Of a stretch of DNA of 64,000 bases, positions 2,867-54,400 are shown piece after piece. Origin of the DNA: Phallusia mammillata (Eukaryota); the NCBI GenBank assembly GCA_965637545.1, contig OZ281496.1, forward strand, positions 27,900,001-27,964,000, written 5' to 3'. Below the pieces are notes generated by a model that was given only the letters and a program-made list of their open reading frames with translations, was not told the DNA's origin and made no database searches. Position numbers and translations under genes: made by a program. The first letter of the stretch is position 1. Each line of letters begins with the position of its first letter.

Positions 2867-5800
2867 TGCGTTGTTGGTTTCACGCAGCAACATACCAGAA
2901 TTGATGTTGAGCAACAGGAAAATGTGCACAGTCAGTCCTATGCAAATATTCAACTTATTTGTACACATAAATCTCCTGTACAGAAATACACAATGTTTGC
3001 CGGTGATAAGGATAGGCGTTGACAATGTGATTCCTTTCTCCAAACTATGCCACGCATCATGTATAAGATCTCAAATAGGTTAAAATAGCTCAAGTGCCGC
3101 GTTTGATTCGTTTACCGGCCCAGCGCGTTCCGAGAGCCAAGCTAAGCAATGCATGACCACGTCAACCGCTTTCTAAGCACTTGCACGTTTCATAAGCCTA
3201 TCTAGTATCCCGTGTGGTTTAGTCTGAAGTGACACACAAAAGTACAAAGCAAATAGTCGGACAATGTCATGTTTCTCACTTTGGTAATATGAAGGTAATC
3301 CGTCAAGCTAAGTTGTATTGACTGCAATATAAAACTCTCCAGAGATATTCCCTCGCAGAAAAAACACTGAGATTGCTTATCACTATACGTAAGTTATAAC
3401 AAAGCTTCACTGTACATACACTAGGGCATAGCGGGCACTAAACAGCTCCATGCAAACTATGTTGTTATTGACTACTTAACTAGCTGCGTCTTAGCAATCT
3501 CACACTAACGCAGATTACTAATGGACAACTAAACTCCTGCTCCCAACGCTCATTGCGCTTGACCCTGCATTTCGGAGAAATCGTTTCTGGAGAAGCAAAG
3601 CGTACTGCTCGGCGGGCGCAAGGCGTCTTGTGCGAAAGGAGGCATGCGACGCGCACAGCACAACTGCCGAAAAATACTTTTCTCATTTACACGAACTCGC
3701 TACTTACGTTTGGCTGGTGACAGAAGGCTACTGTCGGGTTCACACGACTCACAATAAGCAATGCGACCCTTCGACGCAATGCGAAGACAATACCAAATGA
3801 GTAAAGTACTAATAGAAGGCGGCAAATGTCGTGACGGCGTTGACAAGGGATTCTGTTGTAAGCTCATGTTTCGTCGCAACGAGAACGATGTAGCAGTTAA
3901 ACATTAATTCGCTACAAGACCGGTGAGCGACCGATAGGTCCTTTGTCGGCTCTTTATTAAGCCTGAACTCTCTTTCCTGTAATCTAGTGCAGCGTGGCCA
4001 GTTCGTGCGCGACTTTGACTGAATTAAGCCTTGCCCAAAACAAACGCATTGCCTTGAGCGCTTGTGTACAGCTATGGAGCGGTAAACAGTGCGCAGCTCT
4101 AAGAGTCGGTCATCATCATCACACGCGGCCCTAATAAGGCGTTCAGATCAAGATGTGCTCGCAGATATTAGTCGAGCTATCCGTTTACGAACAGAATTGA
4201 TGCTAACCGCACGGAGACGAAAAGAAACAGAGTCGATTTCGAGGTGCCAACTCTCCATGCTTGTTTGCGCGAAAGGCCACAGAGTACGTCTTCCAGCCTT
4301 AAGCAGTCTCTTCTCCCCGGAAGTCTGAGTCTGTATCTGTTACTGATGTTGTTCATGTGGTGGACTTTCCCACTGTTACAAATTTACTACTCACTCAATC
4401 TACAATCTTGGATTGACTGATTTGCTTCAGGCTTATACTATTCAAAACAAAACAAATTTAAAACACATACTTAATGAACATAAAAAAACAATCTTATTCT
4501 GTTACAGTCAAGTTTAAACCAAGGTTATGATCTGCTAGAAAGCATGCATCCACAACGAAAGAAAAAATGGACTTGTATAACACGGCAAATATCAAACATT
4601 GAGCGCTAATATGCTACTAAAGAAAACCATGCTGCATGCTCTTGTTTGCTGCACACGGCTGAATAACCCAGCCGTAAAACCGACAATCGAAAAGAGTAAA
4701 TTGTATATTTCGGTTAAGAGTAAAACAGGGTTTAAATATATATCATAACGTCCTATTTCGATCATTTGTACCTTATACCCTCTTCTTAGGAAAACCTTAC
4801 ACAATACCTATAGCACACACAAACATGGCATTAAATTTTCATTGTTTTACAAAATACAACACCGTCTAAATACAACAGATTCCTGATATACTAATATGTG
4901 TTATTGTAGCAATACTTTCGTCTGCTAAAATGTAGCGTAATTGCTTTTTACATGACCTTTCGACTCGTCCGAAGTTACACACATAATGAGCACCTATATG
5001 GAAAAACCAGTAATCTCCTTTTCAATCGTCCATAGCTTAAAGGGATTATGTTCTGACAAATCTGTTAATTATATACATTGATTTTTCCGAGGTACGACCT
5101 GAACGAGTCAACTGAAAAACGTGTTACACTCATTAAAAATACATTGCACTAATTTTTACAAAATAAACACACACAAACACAATCAACTAGCATTTTAGCA
5201 ATCATATGAAAAGTAACGTGCAGTAAGGGTAATCATTAAAATACTCGCTTTACTGGGAAAGACAAAACTTGTATGCGACTGCCTGTTTTAAATGCAGACA
5301 TTAAGTTCGTGTTCAAAATATTCGAACCAAACAACCACAGTTCTATGCAACGAATAACCAAATACTTATCTGTCATGTTTGAAAAATCTAACGGCCAAAT
5401 GGGTGCAACATGTAAGTAATGTGTAACTAAATTTCAAGCCAACGTAATATCCAATAATCAAGCTTTAGCAAGATGCCTGAACTCAAAAGACTGCTTTATA
5501 ATTCAAAAAACACGTCTACCTTTTTACATGCAACAAAACGATGCCGTAAAAATCGCAATGATCTTACATCATGCCCAGGGCACGAGTTGCCTGTGCCACT
5601 TTTTTAACTTCACGCGAAGTGAAATCTGAAATTTTTCGTGCTTGAGATAAGATCTTGATTAGCATTCCAGTGGTAGACCGCGGAAAGAGCGTGACGGAAA
5701 CATGGTGAACAAACATGCATTTCCGTAAAAAAATTAACCCGACTAATTTACTAGCCTGTGTTTTGTCACATGTCAATAATAATGTGGAAAAAAACTGCTA

Positions 5801-6859
5801 TGATATTTTGACGATTTGCAAACATAATGTAACTAATACGGTGATTGCCTTTGCTGACGATGCCAAATGTTCTAAACTGAAACATAAAACTAAACAACGA
5901 CATATGACAGATACAACAAAACGTGAAAATTTTCCAGTAAAATAATCTTCGTTCTATTAACCAACTAGTCCATTGCTTATAGGTAATAAACTTGCATACT
6001 GACAAAAGCTAGAAACGTATTTTATAACTTTTCGGCCTTACAATCTATATTCTGAATGCTTCCTATCGTTTCTAGTTCGGTTTAAACATGCCATCAAAAC
6101 ATGCTTTTAGATTATATGTAACTTTCACATCAACTTTGGCCTAGCTAGCATAGAGTCGCAGCACATGTGCAAAGAAAAAACATTTACTCTATTAGCAAGT
6201 GGGGATTAAAACTTGGGTGGTCTGCTGGTCTCTACGGGGTTTCTGTGACTAACCTTTAAGCTTTAGTCTTGGGTGGCAATGTGATGGCTATCAAGCCAAT
6301 TTGCCGAGTAAACATAGCCTATAAAAAATTAAAATACGAAAACTATAGATCAGTTGCAAAAAACTGTTTGGCTCAGCTTTTCGTTTAGCTGACAGTTTTT
6401 ATCATAATAGTTTACAAATCACCAAATCTAATTGTATTTCCTCAAAGTAGCAAAATCCAACACTTTGGTGAACAGCTTAAATTAAAAACTGCAAGATTTC
6501 TACTCTTATCTTTCATGTCAACCAAAATCGATGGCGGTTATCAAGCAATCATCGATTACTTTGGGCTGCTAATCATCATGGAAGCTCGTTGACATCCGCA
6601 CCATCAGAGTTTGCAAGTTTCGCATGCTGCACCGTACAGTATGACAAGAATATTTTTGCAAAATACATCGTGAACTTATAATTGTGAGAGCGTAAAACAT
6701 TTAGGAATGATTATATTTGTTCAAAATTAACTTATCTTTGCTTTTTTGTGTGTTAAATTTGTTAAACAGTGGTAAAATGTCGTTTTTTGTCGCTGAAGTA
6801 CATTGGTTCCAATCAGCCAGGGATTAAACGTTTTAAAACGCACAACTACGAAATCTGAA

Positions 6860-9800
6860 ATGTCCCTTACAATAGAAGTATATGACAGTGGCCCTGAAGA
6901 GGAAACTTGTTCCGAGAAAAAAGTAACTCCTTCAGCAAATATTGTGGAGGTATTACAAATAAATGTTCCATAGCTTTTATTAATGTGAAAAGTTTACAAC
7001 CAGTTTTTGTTTTCTAGTATTTTGTCTCAAAAGAAGAAGCTGAGAGAGCTATTAATGAGTTTGAACTTTCAACATCCACCAAGTTTATCAAACTGTTTCG
7101 GCACAAATATGGTAAATGCAAATGCCACTGCAACTGTTTTGTGATTGTTTTTTTTTTATTGCCCCACTGGACATTTTGGTGCACAGTCATAGTTTGTCTA
7201 AAGCAGTGCTCCGCAACCTTTTTCACGCACGTCACACCATACATGCTTTAAATGTTCGGCGGCACACCCGAACCAAAAAAATTCGATTTGAATTTTTGAA
7301 AGCCTAAAAAAGCATTAAGCCAGGGGTCTTAAACTTCTTTGAGGGACAAAAACATTTTTTTACGTTGGTAAAGGGCCGTACTATTGGAACTTTTTTTGTA
7401 AAAGTAATATGAACAAAAAATATTATGTCCTTGAAAGTGTTGTGCGTTTGTGCCATATAATGTACATAAAGCATTTGTAATGCAATAAACAAGAAACAAT
7501 GCGGTGTAGCAAAGTAAAAATACCAAGTGCAATAAACTACTATGTATGAAAACAATGGCATACAAAAAAACAATGGCACGCCGAAACAATTGAAAAATTT
7601 GACGCAACAATTGGAATTGCTGATTTTTAATAGGAGAAACTATTTCCATTTCTAGCCATTACTGATAAAGAATGTTTGTTTCTTAAAATCAGTGGTCTGA
7701 CAGGGCATTCCACTTGAGGTAAACACCTAAAGTTAGTTCGCAGGCGGCACAAAAACCTTCATGGGTCCACACCTGACCCTGCATTAAGCCGCTGTAAAGT
7801 ATATTATGACGTAATAAAACACGAATGTGTAGTGAGTAGTGTAGCTTTAGTTTGGTGTTGTGAACTGTATCATTTGCTATAATGTTAAAATACACAAAAA
7901 CAAATTTAAAACAAAAAGTGGCGGCACACCCAGCATGTCTTGCGGCACACCGGTTGCGGAGCACTGGTCTAAAGAATTCCAAAATTGATTTTTAATTTGA
8001 ATCTTTATCTGTGAAATTTTCAATGACAATATTTGTTTGTACTTAAATTTGGTAACTTTTGATAACAGATCCAACCAGAAGTCGTATTCGATGGGACCCA
8101 AACACCAGGATACCCTTCACTATTGACCAAAGTGCAAAACTTGAATGTCAGCATGGTCGTGATAGAGATTATGAAAGAAAGGAAAAAAGAAAATCCCTCA
8201 AGAATGGGGTATATATACAACAGATATTAATAGAAACAAAAGTGCTCTACTTAAATAAAACAACTTTTGCAGGTTTTAACCCATGGTGGAAAAAGGAAAT
8301 ACCTCAGGGTTGAAGGATCAATTAAGAAAAACTGCAGGGCTTGTATAAGTGTTTTAGAGATATGGACATACCCCGAATATGAGGTAAATTCACCTTCTGT
8401 GTATGTACAATACTAAAACGCATCAAATTATCTATGTTTAAGTCCTTGTTTTTATCCCTGTAAACTCATTCCAATAATAAATTCAGATTGATGAGCTGAT
8501 AAAATCCAAGCAGACTGAGGGGAGTAAAAAGTTGAGGGAACTGCTCAATGGCAACCAATCAAACTTGTTGAAAGAATATGGTTGCTGGGTAACATTTCCA
8601 TCAAGCAATGCCCACTCAGGACATGTGGTTGGAGAGGTATTTAATTTTGGTGCTGCAGTTAAAACTAATCTGCATACATACTCTTTAATGCAAGTTAGTG
8701 TATGTATACATACTAACCTAGCTGTGAAACAAAATTTCCCACTTTGAGCCAAAATTGTTTTCATTGTCTTATGATTGTAAGAGAACAAATAAATAATCTT
8801 TAATGTGCTAAATTATATAAATGTATAAATGTGTTAAAATTAATATAATTGACATGAATACTCACTTGTTTTATATATATATAATACTTTTGAGACCCTT
8901 GAGATAGGTCCATTTATTTAAAAAAAATCTGTAAAATCAAGAGAATACTTGCATGTCATATGTTTTTTAGGCTGTTGAAGTAACTCAACCAGTGGACCCT
9001 CGTTTAATCACAAAAATTAACAGTTTAGTTGATGAAGGGGTTTTCTCAGCCCAGGAAATTAAAGAACGATTATCTTCTTATGTCAACAATGAGCTTTTTC
9101 GTGACACCAAACCTCCACCCTTGTCAAACAAAAGGTTTCATCCCACACTGAAAGTCATACGCAATCATTATTTCAGAGCGTTTATTGACAAGAAACTTGA
9201 TGGGAATGAAACACCTTTAAACATGAAAGTTCTTATGACACTTGACCCATTGGTTGTTGAAAAGATTGCCAACCAGAAGATAGCAATGAGCGCCAAGGCT
9301 GTAAGGCCTGACCCAAGAAATCAAATTTCAGGCATTATAAATCGGATTCGAAATAACATACAAGGTGTAACATCTGAAGCGGACCTGGTTAAAGCCCGCG
9401 ACGAACTGACAAGCATTCTTCAAGATATACACCATGCGTCTGACTACAGTGAAGATATCGACCTTGTAGGCAGTAGCTTGTTTGAGGTTTCAAAGTCAGA
9501 CCCTAACTTGCCTGTTGAAGCGACTGAAGAGGTAACGGTGCTTGAACCGTTCTACCAAGTGGCTTTGGACAATTCAAGCTTTCCCGCAACCTACGCGGTA
9601 GAGGAGAACGTGTCAGGCATTGGAACAACAGAGTTACAGATCAATCTCCAACCCCAGTTTACGCCGAGTATAAAACAAGTAACGCAGAACTCATTGGAAC
9701 AACTTCTGCTCAAAAACGGCCCCCACTACCTCTCGTTGGTCCAATTAAAGTGCCTTGAACCTGAACTTGATTTAGAAGAGCGACAGTTAGTCTTGCTCTC

Positions 9801-10329
9801 GGATAAGAACTTTAAGGAAGGGTGGCTAGTGGACGACGTTCTTAACAGCTACCTATGGTCCTTATGTCAAGAGTACAAACATGTATTATACGCCTCTTCG
9901 GAGCATTCGAGTTTGTTGCAACAGGATATGGCCGTGCCTGAGCTATGGCAGGATGAAACCATTAATGGGAAAAAGTACATATTTGTCCCATGGAACCCAA
10001 CAGGAGCTCACTGGATACTTCTAGCTGTTGACGTTGTCAAACGAACGCTGATGTATTTAGACCCAATGCAGTTGTCATTAGACATCAACGACGTACTTGT
10101 CAAAATGGCGAAGGACTTCATGACAAAGTTAATGAAGGATAAGTTTGACATAAAAATCGTGGCGTTAGAAACCAAAAACCGAACACTGCAGGAAGATGTA
10201 TTGGGTTGTGGAGTGCTTGTTTGCATGTACGCACGGTGGTTAGCATCTAATCAACCTCTTCTTAACTCCGGTTCAGACTATGCGTACAGAAAAGAAATTT
10301 TCGACTGTATCTCTGGAAGTTTGTTTTAG
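6860..10329 (+). CDS. CaRF-like (ALS2CR8-type) N-terminal domain fused to a C-terminal Ulp1/Peptidase C48 protease, about 647 aa
   Basis: Six phase-consistent GT-AG exons: 6860-6949, 7018-7111, 8069-8208, 8273-8383, 8487-8636, 8971-10329. CaRF-like motifs: IPF..AKLECQHG, GSIKKNCRACISV..YPEY, FPSSNAHSGH, QPVDPRLITKINSLVDEGV...KRFHPTLKVIRNHY. C48 motifs: WLVDDVLNSYL, FVPWNPTGAHWILL, YLDP, QEDVLGCGV. Confidence 0.8.
7204..7966. mobile_element. hAT-type MITE in intron 2 of the CaRF-Ulp1 gene
   Basis: TIR CAGTGCTCCGCAACC / GGTTGCGGAGCACTG; 8-bp TSD GTCTAAAG at 7196-7203 and 7967-7974; repeated subterminal GCGGCACACC motifs. Confidence 0.9.
7321..7781. mobile_element. hAT-type MITE nested inside the 7204-7966 MITE
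   Basis: Ends CAGGGGTC / TGACCCTG; 8-bp TSD CATTAAGC at 7313-7320 and 7782-7789. Confidence 0.8.
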
Positions 10330-11038
10330 TGGCCTTTTTCTTGTTTTTGTTCCGATTGTGTTGCATTTTATGCGAAGTAGAACACGCCATAATAAAAACT
10401 AGGGCTTATGTTGTCCGACAGAAGCCAATAATGGCAAATAAATCCACAAATACTTACCGCTGTGTGTTCTTTTCGTGCGTGACAAGATCTTTTGTTGGTC
10501 AGAAAAAAGGAATCAGAACGTAGAATGTCCGATTATATGGTAGTTGTTATATGGAAGCTAGTTGAAGTACAAATCGCGTCGATCGGTACAACAATTGAAA
10601 TTGCGAAAAGTCAGTGGGAACCTGTGGGCTTTCGTGTCAACGAATTTCAATTTACACAGCCAGTGGCAAATTTTGAGAAGCCACATTTTTAGGAGAATGG
10701 GTGGACAAAATGTTGTGACTCTCACAAAAACTAGTTTAAAACGCCAAGTTATAGAATCGAAAATGTAGACGTAGAAACGTTTTTGGAATTGGGTTAACAA
10801 TTTAACATGTACTGCTTGGCCGGGCAATGCTTGTTCACCCTATTTTTTACTCTGGTTGAAGAGAAGTCTCTGGTTGAAGAGAAGTCAAGGAAAAAAGACG
10901 CAGGATAAAGTTCGCTATTGGTTACGCGACGCTGCACGAAGAGTTTGTTTTGATTTCACAAGCGCATTTTTAAAAGAAGTTTGCGTCGTTTTTTTGCTTG
11001 TAATTAATAATGACAATGACAAACGGGTAACAATAATT

Positions 11039-12679
11039 ATGTCAAGTCGAAAACCTTTACCTGATCTCGTTGCTGTTTGGGAAATAGCATTGAGTGATGG
11101 AGTGCACAAAGTGGAATTTGAACATGGCACCACAACAGGAAAAAGAGCAATATATGTTGATGACCAAGTAAAATGTTTATAAATGGATTAGGGATAAAAT
11201 AAATCATTATTGATCCTGATATTATGTTCCGTTAAGGAAATATTTCGCAAGGAATGGATGTTTAAACTGGTAGGAAAGGAAGATTTTGCAATTGGGAAAC
11301 AAAAAGTTAAAGGTATGTGCACTGTGCAGTTGTATTTGTAACTTTTAGTAACTGCTACATGTTTAGGCACCATAAACATTGATGCCTGTAGTGGATTTGC
11401 ATATGAATACACACTAGAAGTGCAGGGAAAAAGCTTAAAAAAGTTTATTGAGAACAAGAACAAAACCAGCAAGGCTTGGACATTGGTTCTGAGTGGTCGA
11501 GATACAAGAATAGTCTTGGGTAAATACAGAATAAAAAACACAATTTAATAGTCCATATTATTTTTGTTATTGATGTCTTTTTAGAAAAAGATACAATGGA
11601 CATTTGGTGCAATGGTGAAAAGATGGAAACTGCAGTAAGAATATAAACTAGTATTTAATTATTTATACCAGGGCTACTCAATTAGTTTCGTCAAAAGTCC
11701 AGATAGAAAAGGTAAAAATTACCAAAGGTCCGGACACTTCTGTCAGATATGCAAATGTAACATGTCTTAGCCTATTTGGTTATAGCTAATGTGGACAATC
11801 GCTGTCAAAATTGAAATCTTGAACTGATATGCACCAAACGTGATTTTATTCCTTGTGAGAGTGTATTGGTACAACGTCATAAAGAATACATTTTATCTGC
11901 TTTTACAGGATTACTTTGTAAGGTAATGATTTAAAATTCAGTTTATTAAATCACAGATACAATTATGTGCAAACAACCGCCGCTTTGTTAAATGTATAGT
12001 GAAATAATCGACCATTTTTTCATCATAGTTGGACAATCTGAACTCACATAAGATTTTGGCAGGACTTTAGGCTCCTCGCAGACTGCCGATCAATCGTTAT
12101 GCCGACCCCAGTTTAAAAAGTGCCTCTACATAGCATTGTTTAGTTAATTAACACACAAATGTTGCCGTAATCAAAAGACCGTCAAGGTCCACATCGAACA
12201 CCTCAAAGGTCCGGATATGGACCGCGGTCAGCCATTTGAGTAGCCCTGATTTATACCTTTACCTTTGTTTGGTTGTGAAGAAAATTTATCTGTAACTTGA
12301 CAAACTTGTATACTTCTTTTTCACCTTCACAAATTTGACATCACATGTCAAATATTTTCATAGGACAAGTTTGCTACATTTGTCTTCCATTGCAGCTTGA
12401 TTTCATTTTGTTTTTGAAATAAATTAACATCTTCTGCTTTAGAGGTTTTATTGTAAATGTTTTACACTAAAGTGGTGCTTTTTGCCTGTATTTGTGCATT
12501 TTGGGACAATTCGTCATCTGATTTACTAAACCCCACAGGGCGAATTTACTGACGAAGGGACAGAAACACACTTTGAAGTGGGTGACCATTCCTGTTATGT
12601 CAAAGCAATATCAAGTGGCAACCGAAAATCTGGAATTATTCACACCCTATATGTTGATGACCGACTGATACCTGATTAA
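11039..12679 (+). CDS. FAIM: Fas apoptotic inhibitory molecule 1
   Basis: Exons 11039-11167, 11237-11312, 11367-11519, 11585-11634, 12539-12679. They give DLVAVWEIALSDGVHKVEFEHGTTTGKR...RKEWMFKLVGKE...FAYEYTLEV...EKDTMDIWCNG...GEFTDEGTETHF...GIIHTL, matching recalled vertebrate FAIM1 along its whole length. Confidence 0.95.
11669..12248. mobile_element. hAT-type MITE in the last FAIM intron
   Basis: TIR CAGGGCTACTCAA / TTGAGTAGCCCTG; 8-bp TSD ATTTATAC at 11661-11668 and 12249-12256. Confidence 0.9.
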
Positions 12680-13342
12680 CTGTTTTTAAATTCCGAAAGT
12701 GACCATTATTGCTTTAGTTTATGTTGTACAGTATTATATTACCTTATTCTACAGAGTTGGCAAAAACAGGTTGCATTTTTACTTTGACTTCTTTACGTCA
12801 GTGGTGCTATTCATTCATTGCCAAGAAAACAAAATTACTGTTCTTGTTCGAACTTTTATGCATTTCTTCTTGGTACTATGCATTTTTGATGAAATAAAAT
12901 TCCAAGCAACTTGCACATTCAATAATCTGTATTATGGCAAACTGTAGAGCTTTTTATTTTATGAATTTAACTGTAATTATTTCATTTGCAAAGTTAAATG
13001 ACTCTATTTGTGTAATAAAATACTTTTCAACAAATTCTGTAAAACAATAATACTTTGCTATTTTATATGTAATCAAATGTTAAAAAGCATTATATTCCCC
13101 ACTTTGCTGCAAAAAAACAAGACTTTATATTTGTTCATTTTTTGTGATGCTGATGCAATAAATTTGCATGAAACATGTATCCAATTTTATGTTATATTAG
13201 GTGCAGATGGGCTGGTCCAAGTTTTGTAACCAAACAAACTTTTTTTGAATAAAAGTAGGAAAACATTTCACAACTGCACAAGTATTTAACTATAAAACTG
13301 GAGAATGTTTTAATGTAACAGCTTCTAAAACTAATTTAAAGC

Positions 13343-51409: not shown

Positions 51410-54400
51410 TTAAGAAGTCACATGAAATCTTTTGATTACAAATCCAGAACCAATAGCAAGGAAGACACACATGACCACTGCGCACCAGCCAAGAATGTAT
51501 GAATAACCCCAGTTGACCCCGGGAACTAAATCAATGTTCGCTGTGTAAAAAGACAAGGCCACAACCTCCATGATCGCTGAAAAACAAGAAGTTTAAAATT
51601 ACTTTTTCTTGTTTTGTAGCATACTGACAAAAGCAACTAAAATTGGATGAAAATAAAACAGATATAACACCAGGGTTAGACAAAGACGTTGTCGGTTCGA
51701 ATCGGTTTATAGTTTATACGAACCTGTATTTTGGGATTTATCGAGTTTTACGAACTAGCAAAAGTTGTACCTGTACGGCTAAGCTTATTGTGCCCGAGTT
51801 AATAATTTAATAAATAAGCTGTTGCTGCCAGGCATAGTATCAAGTCTATAGAGCTCTTCTGGCAAAAGTATTTTTATTCCGACGTTTCGACGTCCTATAC
51901 AGGTCGTCTTCATCAGGGTAAATAACACTGAATGCGACTAGAACAGTGCACGATAAACAAAGGAAAAAAGAATGAAACGCAAGCACGTCACAACGCAACG
52001 AAAACACCGCGCGATAANNNNNNNNNNNNNNNNNNNNNNNNNNNNNNNNNNNNNNNNNNNNNNNNNNNNNNNNNNNNNNNNNNNNNNNNNNNNNNNNNNN
52101 NNNNNNNNNNNNNNNNNNNNNNNNNNNNNNNNNNNNNNNNNNNNNNNNNNNNNNNNNNNNNNNNNNNNNNNNNNNNNNNNNNNNNNNNNNNNNNNNNNNN
52201 NNNNNNNNNNNNNNNNNCGCATTCAGTGTTATTTACCCTGATGAAGACGACCTGTATAGGACGTCGAAACGTCGGAATAAAAATACTTTTGCCAGAAGAG
52301 CTCTATAGACTTAATAATTTAATATCTGTCAATAAGGTTTTGAATCTTCTCCATAGTCTCAACCCATACGGGCGTCCCGTAATTAAATACACTTATGACC
52401 GACGTGAAATATCTGGACTGATAAAACTAGATGAGGTATTGTATCAAATATTAACTTCCGTGTAGTAGATGCCATGGTTTTCGATAGCACAACTGAAGTT
52501 ATAACGTTTTAATGGCATTGAACACATTTGAAAGCGTGAATAATTTACGCGCCAACCTGATTTAACGATGTTTGATGTACAAAACTCTCATTTTCGAGAA
52601 AACCACAATTAAACTCACAATTCAACAATGCCACTGTTTGTTTTCGAGGTTAAGGCACTACGTCCGGTTTTGCTATGCGACGCTGACTGCATTGAGCTAT
52701 TAAAAGCATTGAGCTATTAACTGAATTCAAAAGCAAGTGACTTTTCGTCATTTATATTACTATTCATTTTACCCAACATTGTCAACACTCATCTATAGCA
52801 GTGCTCTTCAACCTTTTTAGTGACGCGGAACCCTTAAGGTATTTTGTCAAACTTTGCGGAACTCCCATAAAATAATTTTAATGAATGTAACACAAGTAGG
52901 CCACATCAAAGAAAAAAGATGCATACACATCCAAAGCACATCACAAAGGTTGACTTGAATTAAACGGTTAACTGAAACGCATTGCCGTGTTATTTGGATC
53001 GGTCGTTTCTACATTAATCTCGCAACTTGGCTAGAGTGTGACAAGGTTGTATTTATTACGTCACAATTGATCAATGGTGTAACAAAGGTTAACAATATTG
53101 CACAGGCGAGCATTGCTGTTCGAAACAATGATATTATGAATCGTTCATGTTCGAATTGCTACTCCCCCATAAAGTTCACGGAACCCCGGTTGAAGAGCTC
53201 TGATCTATAGCGAACACAGATGCGTAATTGATACTAAATGTCAAGTAAGTTCAGACATATTTATTACTATATTTTGTTTAAAAGCGCTGAAATAAAAACA
53301 ACCTGATAATTGATGTATCACATTTAATTATCAACTTTTGCCTATAGCAGTGGTTCCCAACCTTCCATGGACCGTGGCCCCCTAAAAGTGTCATTTTTGC
53401 CTGGTGGCCCCCTTCATGTAACCTTGTATGTCCTGTGGCCCCCTTAAAGTGTAAATGGCAAACTCGTGTGGAAATTGGATACTAATATCGGCTTTAAACG
53501 CAGGTCGAATAGAGTAAATAATAAGGGTCCGCATTCGTAAAAAGCCTCGATATAGACAAACAGTATGCAAAATAGTTGATTAAATTAGGGACTTTTTAGT
53601 GAATGTTTCTGGTAAATCTACACCTGTGGCCCCCTTGGGGGGCCATGGGCCCTGGTTGGGAACCACTGGCCTATAGTGTTGTTAGCAACTGGCGATTCCG
53701 TTAAAAAGCAGGCTAAAATCTTCCGAAACACATGTTTGATGGTTGTTCGTGCTTAAAACGGACCCCTTGCATTTTGAATTTTTTTTTCTGAGGTTATGTT
53801 TGGTCACATTACCTGCCGAAGTGAAGCTCCCTGGCAATCCTCTTGCAGTTGCCCAAGCATCCAGAGGATAATTTTGAAACAAAACCCGCAAACAGTGGCA
53901 TACGGCAGCCAACAGTGATAATGTGGAAGTTATTGCGAAAATCCGTGTCGGCCAATGAAACCAAACGTCCAAAGAAGCTACGTGGAAAAAAGATTGTTGT
54001 ATTTAAATTTATGAACACCAAAGCTACGGGTTGACCACTTTGAAGTACGTTAATAACATAAAACAATTACAAATAAGTTTATGAAATATTAACTAAAAAC
54101 TACATTTGAGATGCTAACATGAAGCGTCGATGCAGACCAGCGATCACGATAATACATATCGATAAATCATAGTACGCCAGGCCTATTAAAGGTGTGTACC
54201 GAATCAGCTGGTCTCCCAAGCATTCTCATATGGCAGGGCACAGACTAGAAATATCTAGCCACATGGGAATGCTTGGGAGACCAGCTGATTCGGTACACAC
54301 CTTTAATAGGCCTGGCGTACTATAATTGATGACACTTGAGATGTACATAATAAAATACTTTTTGGGAGAAAATGGGAACGTCAATTTTGTGAGATATCAC

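What the first reader, a model, noticed from the sequence alone, without database searches (positions are those of the whole stretch)
6860..10329. CaRF-like DNA-binding domain fused to an intact Ulp1-type SUMO protease, with no transposase core
Seen: a six-exon, ~647-aa ORF with CaRF-like motifs at the N-terminus and a C48 protease with His, Asp, oxyanion Gln and Cys in canonical order. Established: Ulp1 domains are often captured by Mutator-like and other DNA transposons. From memory, CaRF-like domains also occur at the N-terminus of Mutator-like transposases. Inference: this is a domesticated or deletion-derived element, since no DDE or SWIM region and no flanking TIRs are visible. It could be a chromatin-targeted deSUMOylase. 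The intact spliced frame, despite nested MITEs in an intron, suggests selection.
Basis: partly seen in the sequence, partly recalled or inferred. Interest (0 to 1): 0.7.

Follow-up and report, generated by a model that had tools for sequence, protein, structure and literature searches.

The report
Transposase-derived DNA-binder fused to SUMO protease
This sea-squirt gene is a leftover of a Mutator-type jumping gene that kept the DNA-binding head and the SUMO-protease tail, lost the cutting enzyme in between, and has since been conserved and expressed like an ordinary host gene.

Summary
Window 6860-10329 (+) carries a six-exon, 647-aa gene of Phallusia mammillata. It matches a public 647-aa protein apart from one residue. 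All five GT-AG junctions appear in about 2.2-kb transcript contigs from four studies. Pfam finds a full ALS2CR8 (CaRF) domain (E 4e-35) and Peptidase_C48 (E 6e-11). His542, Asp559, Gln602 and Cys608 are in place, and the fold matches Ulp1/SENP.

The same genome holds a young Mutator-like transposon family: 7.4 kb, 96-bp inverted ends, 7-bp target duplications, about 20 copies. Its protein reads ALS2CR8, DDE core, SWIM, Ulp1, PHD. The window protein lines up with it on both sides of a missing stretch of about 470 aa (DDE plus SWIM). It shares at least four intron positions with it and also lacks the PHD finger.

The gene is single copy and has no inverted ends. An unnamed second species carries an ortholog with the same architecture. 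Synonymous sites between the two are saturated while pN is 0.15-0.35. That ortholog has lost the catalytic Cys, the oxyanion Gln and a tunnel Trp, so catalysis may not be the conserved function.

This is a domesticated transposase fragment, a new variant of a known kind. Earlier notes of this scan had already described the parent Mutator-Ulp1-PHD transposons elsewhere in this genome.

The parts
6752..10456 (+). Transcribed unit (mRNA of about 2.16-2.18 kb after splicing)
   Evidence: Contigs of runs X1, X4, X7 and X17 (four studies) start at 6752-6770 and end at 10434-10456. All skip the same five GT..AG introns.
6860..6949 (+). Exon 1 coding part (aa 1-30, acidic, no domain)
   Evidence: Sequence; equals P0001 residues 1-30; no Pfam hit.
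7018..7111 (+). Exon 2 (aa 31-61 plus the first base of codon 62); start of the DNA-binding domain (first strand and helix)
   Evidence: Conserved in the ortholog L037 (22 of 31 identical) and in transposon copies.
7193..7976 (.). ~780-bp dispersed repeat (MITE-like) inside intron 2
   Evidence: Inverted arms at 7194-7234 and 7936-7976. At least 57 copies in the genome at 77-86% identity.
8069..8208 (+). Exon 3 (aa 62-108); ALS2CR8 profile positions 7-49; putative zinc ligand Cys88 (8146-8148)
   Evidence: Pfam E 5e-06 on the exon alone. 35 of 46 residues identical in the ortholog. The Cys is nearly invariant in 70 homologs.
8273..8383 (+). Exon 4 (aa 109-145); ALS2CR8 profile positions 59-87; putative zinc ligand Cys129 (8333-8335)
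   Evidence: invariant Cys column.
8487..8636 (+). Exon 5 (aa 146-195); ALS2CR8 profile positions 97-140; His188 and His191 (8613-8615, 8622-8624) of the HxxH motif
   Evidence: both His invariant in 70 homologs.
8971..9198 (+). Exon 6, first part (aa 196-271): helical C-terminal part of ALS2CR8. This is the last stretch collinear with the transposase before the gap.
   Evidence: Pfam profile positions 165-228, E 1.4e-11. Aligns to L021 ORF 5084-5779 up to 'RAFIDKKL'.
9199..9321 (+). Deletion scar / linker (aa 272-312). It stands where the transposase has about 470 aa of DDE core and SWIM finger.
   Evidence: No alignment to the DDE/SWIM parts of P0012 or L021. Low model confidence.
9322..9465 (+). 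Conserved helix (aa ~313-360, '..IINRIRNNIQGVTSEADL..'). Homologous to the segment about 75 aa after SWIM in the transposase. Kept in all DDE-less relatives examined here except the recent copy L026.
   Evidence: Alignment to L021 ORF2 from residue 173. The same motif is visible in the Ciona, Clavelina and P0006 proteins. Predicted as a helix.
9658..10326 (+). Ulp1/SENP-type C48 protease domain (aa 425-647), with His542, Asp559, Gln602, Cys608 and tunnel Trp480 and Trp543
   Evidence: Pfam PF02902 at 43 bits against a cutoff of 20.7. SENP2/SENP1/Ulp1 sequence hits. Model pLDDT 95-98. Foldseek best hits Ulp1/SENP1, E 4e-09, TM 0.72. 65 of 81 homologs carry H-D-Q-C.
10327..10329 (+). Stop codon at the point where relatives continue into a PHD finger
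   Evidence: Transposon ORFs and the Ciona and Clavelina proteins carry a C-terminal PHD. No PHD remnant lies downstream of the stop.
10781..11179 (+). Start of the neighbouring FAIM gene (context only)
   Evidence: A separate transcript contig starts at 10781. FAIM1 Pfam E 1.8e-13 on 10856-11179.

Best explanation
The locus is a single-copy, expressed host gene of Phallusia mammillata. It arose from the transposase gene of a Mutator-like (MULE) DNA transposon whose protein reads ALS2CR8 DNA-binding domain, DDE/RNase-H core, SWIM finger, helix, Ulp1/SENP protease, PHD finger. An internal DNA deletion removed the DDE core and SWIM (about 470 aa), and the PHD finger was also lost. What remains is a zinc-dependent DNA-binding head of probable WRKY-GCM1 type, joined by a flexible linker and a conserved helix to a complete SENP-type cysteine isopeptidase.

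Shown here: the anatomy, the parent transposon family, single-copy status, absence of transposon ends, expression and splicing, an ortholog in a second species, and long-term purifying selection.

Inferred: the protein binds specific DNA sites through the ALS2CR8 head and brings a SUMO-type isopeptidase, or at least a SUMO-binding protease fold, to chromatin. There it would remove SUMO from bound factors or hold on to them. It cannot transpose.
For: Gene model and expression.

Parent element: L021 carries the ALS2CR8 C-terminal part and MULE/ZSWIM1-3 RNase-H-like in one ORF, and SWIM, C48 and PHD in the next. Copies are 95-99% identical, with internal-deletion derivatives. One copy at C3:17670371-17677756 is 7386 bp with 96-bp TIRs (95 of 96 identical). 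Three copies have 7-bp TSDs. The genome holds about 40 TIR hits.

Derivation: collinear alignment up to aa ~271 and from aa ~313. Intron positions are shared at aa 61/62, 108/109, 145/146 and 195/196. No DDE, SWIM or PHD remnant in window 4001-13000.

Host-gene behaviour: only one genomic match to the gene at the DNA level. No TIRs. In the C48 tree the window protein and P0002 are sisters (100/99) and lie outside the clade of this genome's transposon copies (98/100). Ortholog contigs L036-L039 have the same exons and introns, no DDE and no PHD, and L037 has no flanking TIRs. pS is 0.73-0.99 (saturated), against pN 0.15-0.26 in exons 2-5 and 0.31 in C48.

Protease: catalytic tetrad and both tunnel Trp are present. 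The fold matches Ulp1/SENP1-3,5 best.

DNA-binding head: conserved C, C, H, H. The only non-helical structural match is the Aft2-DNA complex, a WRKY-GCM1 fold, at Z 7.3 over model residues 20-189.
Against: The only clear ortholog comes from unnamed metagenome contigs, so the depth of conservation cannot be dated.

That ortholog has Trp for the oxyanion Gln, Ser for the catalytic Cys and His for tunnel Trp480. Protease activity is therefore not conserved across the two species.

No FAIM or other shared neighbour was found within 4-7 kb of the ortholog. Positional orthology is therefore unproven.

The relationship to the DDE-less Ciona (LOC100185158) and Clavelina proteins is unresolved. Their monophyly with the window gene is neither supported nor rejected (p-AU 0.31). 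The ALS tree places the Ciona protein elsewhere.

The Aft2 match at Z 7.3 lies in the range where chance folds also score.

No biochemical or DNA-binding data exist.
Confidence: 0.7

Rival explanations
1. Transposon-control factor. The DDE-less protein is retained because it recognises the ends or subterminal repeats of the still-young MULE family through the shared ALS2CR8 head. It would compete with or modify the transposase, in the way truncated repressors of other DNA transposons do. This still counts as domestication, but the target would be the transposon and not host promoters.
For: The parent family is young and partly intact in the same genome (copies 98-99% identical, intact SWIM-C48-PHD ORFs). 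The retained head is the same domain the transposase carries at its N-terminus, which presumably binds the element's ends. Several other DDE-less or ALS2CR8-only proteins are expressed in Phallusia (P0005, P0006, P0007, P0014).
Against: The window head is only about 32-48% identical to those of the resident transposon copies, so shared DNA specificity is not assured. The gene lineage predates the resident families in the C48 tree. No binding data exist.
Confidence: 0.15
2. Ordinary non-autonomous transposon copy. On this view it is an internally deleted MULE that happens to be transcribed, with no host function.
For: Internal-deletion derivatives of this superfamily are common in this genome, including a recent DDE-less copy (L026). 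No conserved synteny was found.
Against: No TIRs or TSD. No second copy at the DNA level. The best paralog is 42% identical at the protein level. An intact 647-codon frame with an intact counterpart in another species, despite saturated synonymous sites. A discrete spliced mRNA in four studies.
Confidence: 0.07
3. Pseudo-protease scaffold. The conserved role needs the C48 fold as a SUMO- or UBL-binding module and not as an enzyme. The intact active site in P. mammillata would be ancestral carry-over.
For: The ortholog keeps the fold (pN 0.31 with saturated pS) but has lost Cys, Gln and one tunnel Trp. Other DDE-less relatives (P0006 = L027) also have dead active sites yet are expressed.
Against: In the window gene all six diagnostic residues are intact, as in 65 of 81 homologs. 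Chance retention over this divergence is unlikely without selection on them in this lineage.
Confidence: 0.2
4. Reverse direction. An ancestral host gene (ALS2CR8 plus Ulp1) would have been captured by a MULE, so the window gene is the donor and not the derivative.
For: MULEs are known to capture host fragments, and Ulp1 domains in MULEs have been discussed as captures (PMC2836005, PMC6446971).
Against: ALS2CR8+DDE+SWIM proteins occur across molluscs, echinoderms, amphioxus and tunicates. DDE-less ALS2CR8+C48 proteins were seen only in tunicates. The DDE-SWIM block sits between the two parts in one reading frame, with introns shared on both sides. That fits a deletion much better than an insertion of a transposase into a host linker.
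Confidence: 0.04

Closest known systems
Mutator-like (MuDR/MULE) transposases with a C-terminal Ulp1 protease and PHD finger (reported for hydra, lancelet and plants; Bao, Kapitonov & Jurka 2010, PMC2836005)
   Same: The ALS2CR8 head, post-SWIM helix and C48 domain are homologous and collinear. Intron positions are shared. The parent family lives in the same genome.
   Different: No DDE core, SWIM, PHD, TIRs or TSD. Single copy and conserved in another species.
Domesticated MULE transposase genes (FHY3/FAR1 and MUSTANG in plants; ZSWIM1/3-type genes in animals)
   Same: A host gene derived from a MULE transposase that keeps the N-terminal zinc-finger DNA-binding domain.
   Different: Those genes keep the DDE-like core and SWIM. 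This one discards them and keeps the accessory protease instead.
Vertebrate CaRF (ALS2CR8), a calcium-responsive transcription factor
   Same: The same Pfam DNA-binding domain over nearly its full length (E 3.7e-35).
   Different: Not shown to be an ortholog. The window head groups with tunicate transposon-related sequences. CaRF has no protease domain (my own knowledge).
Ulp1/SENP SUMO proteases (SENP1, SENP2, yeast Ulp1)
   Same: Fold, catalytic His-Asp-Cys, oxyanion Gln and Gly-Gly tunnel Trp pair.
   Different: Only about 17-18% identical. The targeting region is a transposase-derived DNA-binding domain in place of the usual N-terminal localisation regions. Substrate is untested.
Ciona intestinalis LOC100185158 and Clavelina lepadiformis LOC143453306 (uncharacterised)
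   Same: ALS2CR8 plus C48 without a DDE core; active-site residues intact.
   Different: They retain the PHD finger. Clavelina lacks the helical end of ALS2CR8. Orthology with the window gene is unresolved.

Membership tests
Peptidase C48 (Ulp1/SENP) | Match to PF02902 above the curated cutoff | tested here: met
   43.1 bits against a cutoff of 20.7, E 5.5e-11.
Peptidase C48 (Ulp1/SENP) | Catalytic His, Asp and Cys with the oxyanion Gln six residues before Cys | tested here: met
   His542, Asp559, Gln602, Cys608. The same columns read H-D-Q-C in 65 of 81 homologs.
Peptidase C48 (Ulp1/SENP) | Ulp1-like fold | tested here: met
   Model pLDDT 95-98 over the domain. Foldseek top hits Ulp1, SENP1, SENP2, SENP3 and SENP5 at E 4e-09 to 1e-07, TM 0.6-0.73.
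Peptidase C48 (Ulp1/SENP) | Cleavage of SUMO (as against NEDD8 or ubiquitin) conjugates | not testable with these tools
   SENP/Ulp1 rank above NEDP1/Den1 in the fold search, which is only suggestive.
ALS2CR8 / CaRF DNA-binding domain | Match to PF15299 above the cutoff over most of the profile | tested here: met
   122.4 bits against 28.9; profile 2-228 of 235. The pieces lie in collinear order exon by exon.
ALS2CR8 / CaRF DNA-binding domain | Conserved Cys/Cys/His/His set | tested here: met
   Cys88, Cys129, His188 and His191 correspond to the nearly invariant or invariant columns of a 70-sequence alignment.
ALS2CR8 / CaRF DNA-binding domain | Orthology to vertebrate CaRF | not tested
   No vertebrate CaRF sequence was placed in a tree. 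The window head sits in a tunicate clade with transposon-linked sequences.
WRKY-GCM1 zinc-finger fold | Antiparallel sheet with a C-C-H-H zinc site, similar to solved members | tested here: inconclusive
   The Aft2-DNA complex 4lmg_A scores Z 7.3, rmsd 2.7, 74 residues, covering model residues 20-189. It is the only match to the sheet domain, but its Z lies in the grey zone. Foldseek found nothing.
Autonomous or non-autonomous MULE transposon | DDE/RNase-H core (PF10551) and SWIM finger | tested here: not met
   Absent from the protein and from six-frame searches of window 4001-13000.
Autonomous or non-autonomous MULE transposon | Terminal inverted repeats with a target-site duplication | tested here: not met
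   No flanking inverted pair. The family TIR is absent from the window. None of the genome's TIR hits lies near C3:27.9 Mb.
Autonomous or non-autonomous MULE transposon | Multiple near-identical copies | tested here: not met
   Only the locus itself matches at the DNA level. The other hits are the intron-2 repeat.
Domesticated transposase-derived host gene | Homology and collinearity with a transposon protein | tested here: met
Domesticated transposase-derived host gene | An ortholog in another species with an intact frame under purifying selection | tested here: met
   L036-L039 have the same exons. pS is saturated and pN is 0.15-0.35. Only one species, of unknown identity.
Domesticated transposase-derived host gene | Conserved genomic position (synteny) | tested here: inconclusive
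Domesticated transposase-derived host gene | Transcription as a discrete spliced mRNA | tested here: met

The most novel reading that the evidence does not exclude
The CaRF-type (ALS2CR8) DNA-binding domain may be the WRKY-GCM1-like N-terminal head of a metazoan-wide clade of Mutator transposases. If so, the vertebrate neuronal factor CaRF would itself be a domesticated MULE fragment. Tunicates would then have domesticated, at least once and perhaps several times, the same head together with the element's SUMO protease. The result would be a sequence-targeted deSUMOylase, an enzyme class not described among host proteins.
Probability: 0.3. Interest if true: 0.65.

Novelty: new variant of a known kind. 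Interest (0 to 1): 0.5.

Why it matters
Transposase domestication usually keeps the DNA-binding domain alone, or that domain with the catalytic core. Here the accessory SUMO-type protease, whose role in transposons has never been tested, was kept with the DNA-binding head, and the cutting enzyme was discarded.

The parent transposon, recent deletion copies and an old conserved derivative sit side by side in one genome. The experimental relative Ciona also carries a DDE-less gene of this kind. Together these make the function of transposon-borne Ulp1 domains directly testable.

The finding also ties the orphan CaRF/ALS2CR8 domain to Mutator transposases. I found no mention of this link in the searchable literature.

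Tried and rejected
- The word-indexed protein search, run twice, returned only the protein itself. The exhaustive representative search was needed to find relatives.
The Ciona and Clavelina loci, and their synteny with FAIM, could not be examined.
- Names for most close C48 relatives were unavailable because they come from unnamed ENA/JGI/Logan contigs. The host of the ortholog contigs stays unknown.
- tblastx of the ortholog flanks against the whole window gave only one weak, probably repeat-derived match.
- Foldseek against the PDB gave nothing for the ALS2CR8 model. Only the slower structural search gave the Aft2 match.
- The large 58-row careful tree did not finish, so the quick tree was used. 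A 22-row careful tree replaced it.
- Monophyly of the four DDE-less tunicate genes could be neither shown nor rejected.
- The claim of nested MITEs was not supported.
- I built no joined spliced protein. Exons were searched one by one by reference. Whole-protein work used the public protein P0001 by its id. dN/dS was computed per exon, and for exons 2-5 only the counts were pooled.
Full report
**What is at the locus.** I read window 6500-10700 and derived six exons by hand: 6860-6949, 7018-7111, 8069-8208, 8273-8383, 8487-8636 and 8971-10326, with the stop at 10327-10329. Every intron is GT..AG and the frame totals 647 codons. The word-indexed protein search returned one hit, a 647-aa UniRef/nr protein of Phallusia mammillata (P0001, named after Ciona LOC100185158). 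Its sequence follows the six-exon model residue for residue except for one Val/Ile difference, so it comes from an independent individual. The window is C3:27900001-27964000 of a 240-Mb assembly.

The exons were scanned one by one by reference, and whole-protein analyses used the public entry P0001 by its id.

**Domains.**
- Exon by exon, Pfam places ALS2CR8 profile positions 7-49, 59-87, 97-140 and 165-228 in exons 3, 4, 5 and 6, in collinear order. Peptidase_C48 falls in exon 6.
- On P0001, ALS2CR8 scores 122 bits (E 3.7e-35, profile 2-228 of 235). Peptidase_C48 scores 43 bits (E 5.5e-11). Nothing else is found: no MULE, SWIM or PHD.
- The protease has His542, Asp559, Gln602 and Cys608, with Gln at -6 from Cys as in Ulp1/SENP. 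It also has the two Trp (480, 543) that form the Gly-Gly tunnel in SENPs.
- A model of exon 6 has pLDDT 95-98 across the C48 domain. Its best PDB matches are Ulp1, SENP1, SENP2, SENP3 and SENP5 (E 4e-09 to 1e-07, TM up to 0.73), ahead of NEDP1/Den1.
- In a 70-sequence alignment of ALS2CR8 heads, one Cys and two His are invariant and a second Cys is nearly invariant. In the window protein these are Cys88, Cys129, His188 and His191.
- A model of a close Phallusia ALS2CR8-only paralog (P0005, pLDDT 81) shows a sheet with inserted helices, followed by a helical part. Foldseek found nothing. The exhaustive structural search gave helical hairpins for the tail. Its only match to the sheet domain was the Aft2-DNA complex, at Z 7.3 with 74 residues over model residues 20-189. 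From my own knowledge, Aft2 has a WRKY-GCM1 fold, which is the kind of head typical of MULE transposases. The score is in the grey zone, so I treat this as suggestive.

**Expression.** Twenty public runs from six studies hold the stretch. Most hold about 0.52-0.58 of its words, which is the exonic share. I laid contigs from four studies on window 6500-10900. Each gave one 2157-2179-nt contig running from 6752-6770 to 10434-10456, skipping exactly the five predicted introns. A separate contig starts at 10781 for the next gene. That neighbour is FAIM (Pfam FAIM1, E 1.8e-13). The run type is only guessed as RNA, but the spliced form is itself the evidence.

**Where it comes from.** A six-frame search of the genome with exon 6 gave 78 matches. 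Many come as pairs of an ALS2CR8 piece and a C48 piece about 2 kb apart on one strand, at 36-42% identity. I fetched 15 such loci. Their matches break at the same residues as the window gene (61/62, 145/146, 195/196), and they have a short intron at 108/109 as well.

In L021 the exon that carries the end of ALS2CR8 runs straight into a MULE / ZSWIM1-3 RNase-H-like core. The next long ORF carries SWIM, C48 and a C-terminal PHD finger. These loci are real transposons:
- Family A copies are 95-99% identical, with assorted internal deletions.
- The copy at C3:17670371-17677756 is 7386 bp, with 96-bp terminal inverted repeats (95 of 96 identical) and a 7-bp target duplication.
- Two more copies also have 7-bp duplications.
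- The TIR occurs about 40 times in the genome, and never near the window.

Earlier notes of this scan (s1-399164, s1-358930) describe decayed members of this Mutator-SWIM-Ulp1-PHD kind elsewhere in the genome. Bao et al. 2010 (PMC2836005) already record Ulp1 and PHD domains in Mutator transposases of hydra, lancelet and plants. The parent element is therefore a known kind.

**The deletion.** The window protein aligns with the transposase up to about residue 271, the end of ALS2CR8. It aligns again from about residue 313, at a conserved helix that in L021 lies some 75 residues after the SWIM finger. It then continues through the C48 domain. About 470 residues (DDE core and SWIM) are replaced by about 40. 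The protein stops where relatives continue into PHD. No DDE, SWIM or PHD remnant is detectable in window 4001-13000, introns included, or after the stop.

**Host gene or transposon copy.**
- At the DNA level the gene is unique in the genome. All other hits belong to a ~780-bp repeat in intron 2 (7193-7976, at least 57 copies).
- No inverted repeats flank it.
- The exhaustive protein search (873 hits) gave a 478-aa protein (P0002, 49% identical) that covers exon 6 collinearly, linker included.
- Its contigs (L036-L039, from three JGI samples, host unnamed) contain the same exons 2-6 with the same introns, no DDE and no PHD. L037, the one contig I checked for inverted repeats, has none flanking the gene.
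- In a careful C48 tree the two proteins are sisters (100/99) and lie outside the well-supported clade of this genome's transposon copies (98/100) (quick tree).
- Synonymous differences are saturated in every exon (pS 0.73-0.99). Non-synonymous differences are 0.15-0.26 in exons 2-5, 0.30 in the ALS2CR8 tail, 0.31 in C48 and 0.35-0.55 in the linkers.

Two intact frames with this pattern after such divergence indicate long purifying selection on a protein that cannot catalyse transposition.

**Caveats.**
- The ortholog's host is unknown. No shared neighbour (FAIM) was seen within 4-7 kb.
- Ciona LOC100185158 and Clavelina LOC143453306 are also ALS2CR8+C48 proteins without DDE, but they keep PHD. 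One clade of all four DDE-less genes is not rejected (p-AU 0.31) but is not supported either. The ALS2CR8 tree puts the Ciona protein with other sequences. One old domestication and several parallel ones remain equally open.
- The ortholog has Trp for Gln602, Ser for Cys608 and His for Trp480. Another expressed DDE-less Phallusia paralog (P0006 = L027) is also catalytically dead. Catalysis is thus plausible in P. mammillata, where all diagnostic residues are intact as in 65 of 81 homologs. It may not be the conserved function.

**Mechanism.** Shown here: a zinc-type DNA-binding head joined to a complete SENP-like domain, expressed, conserved and unable to transpose. Inferred: sequence-specific DNA binding by the head, delivering SUMO-type isopeptidase activity or SUMO binding to chromatin. 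One attractive variant is control of the resident MULE family through its ends (rival 1). A non-catalytic scaffold role is rival 3.

**Wider link.** ALS2CR8+DDE+SWIM proteins occur in Ciona, Pecten, Pinctada, Branchiostoma and Diadema. Full-text searches found no paper that connects ALS2CR8 or CaRF with transposases. Dupeyron et al. 2019 report little evidence of MULEs in chordates beyond one Ciona savignyi sequence (PMC6446971). That CaRF's domain is a MULE head is therefore a testable and possibly unreported point, but I did not place vertebrate CaRF in a tree.

**Verdict.** This is a domesticated, deletion-derived Mutator transposase gene of unusual composition: a new variant of a known kind, of moderate interest.

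Noticed in passing
window 7193-7976: The ~780-bp repeat in intron 2 has weak inverted arms (7194-7234 / 7936-7976) and at least 57 genomic copies at 77-86% identity. It behaves as a single unit, not as nested MITEs.
   Followed up: partly
G000:C3:17670371-17677756 (L015/L023); also L033, L031: A young Mutator-like element of 7386 bp with 96-bp TIRs starting CGGTAGAGCTACTAAC, subterminal ~129-bp tandem repeats and 7-bp target duplications in three copies. That is shorter than the 8-11 bp usually quoted for MULEs.
   Followed up: partly
L026 (G000:C6:23287000-23296999), about 6788-7679: A recent DDE-less deletion copy of transposon family B. The ALS2CR8 tail runs almost directly into C48-PHD, with breakpoints different from those of the window gene. 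It shows that such deletions arise repeatedly.
   Followed up: partly
L027 (G000:C3:24688000-24697999), ORF from 4695; protein P0006: A second expressed DDE-less Phallusia protein (751 aa) with ALS2CR8, a C48 fold whose active-site columns read D-D-P-S, and a PHD finger. It sits on a very long branch in the C48 tree.
   Followed up: partly
proteins P0155 and P0004 (Ciona intestinalis LOC100185158 isoforms X1 and X2): Isoform X2 lacks 49 residues that correspond exactly to exon 5 of the window gene. That exon carries the HxxH zinc ligands, so exon skipping would give a variant without a complete zinc site.
   Followed up: no
proteins P0055, P0099, P0121, P0131, P0148: ALS2CR8 + MULE DDE + SWIM proteins occur in Ciona, Pecten, Pinctada, Branchiostoma and Diadema. 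The CaRF-type domain is thus the head of a widespread animal Mutator clade. No paper in the library connects the two.
   Followed up: partly
proteins P0005, P0007, P0014, P0019, P0022, P0035 (Phallusia mammillata): Several expressed Phallusia proteins consist of an ALS2CR8 domain only (359-671 aa). P0005 is the closest head to the window gene (46% identical).
   Followed up: no
L021 134-3142: Non-LTR retrotransposon ORFs (endonuclease and reverse-transcriptase motifs) lie just upstream of the family B Mutator copy.
   Followed up: no
window 53324-53416 versus L037 1090-1182: The only other similarity between the window and the ortholog contig is a weak tblastx match (31 aa, 42%, E 1.6e-04). 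It is probably a shared repeat and not synteny.
   Followed up: no
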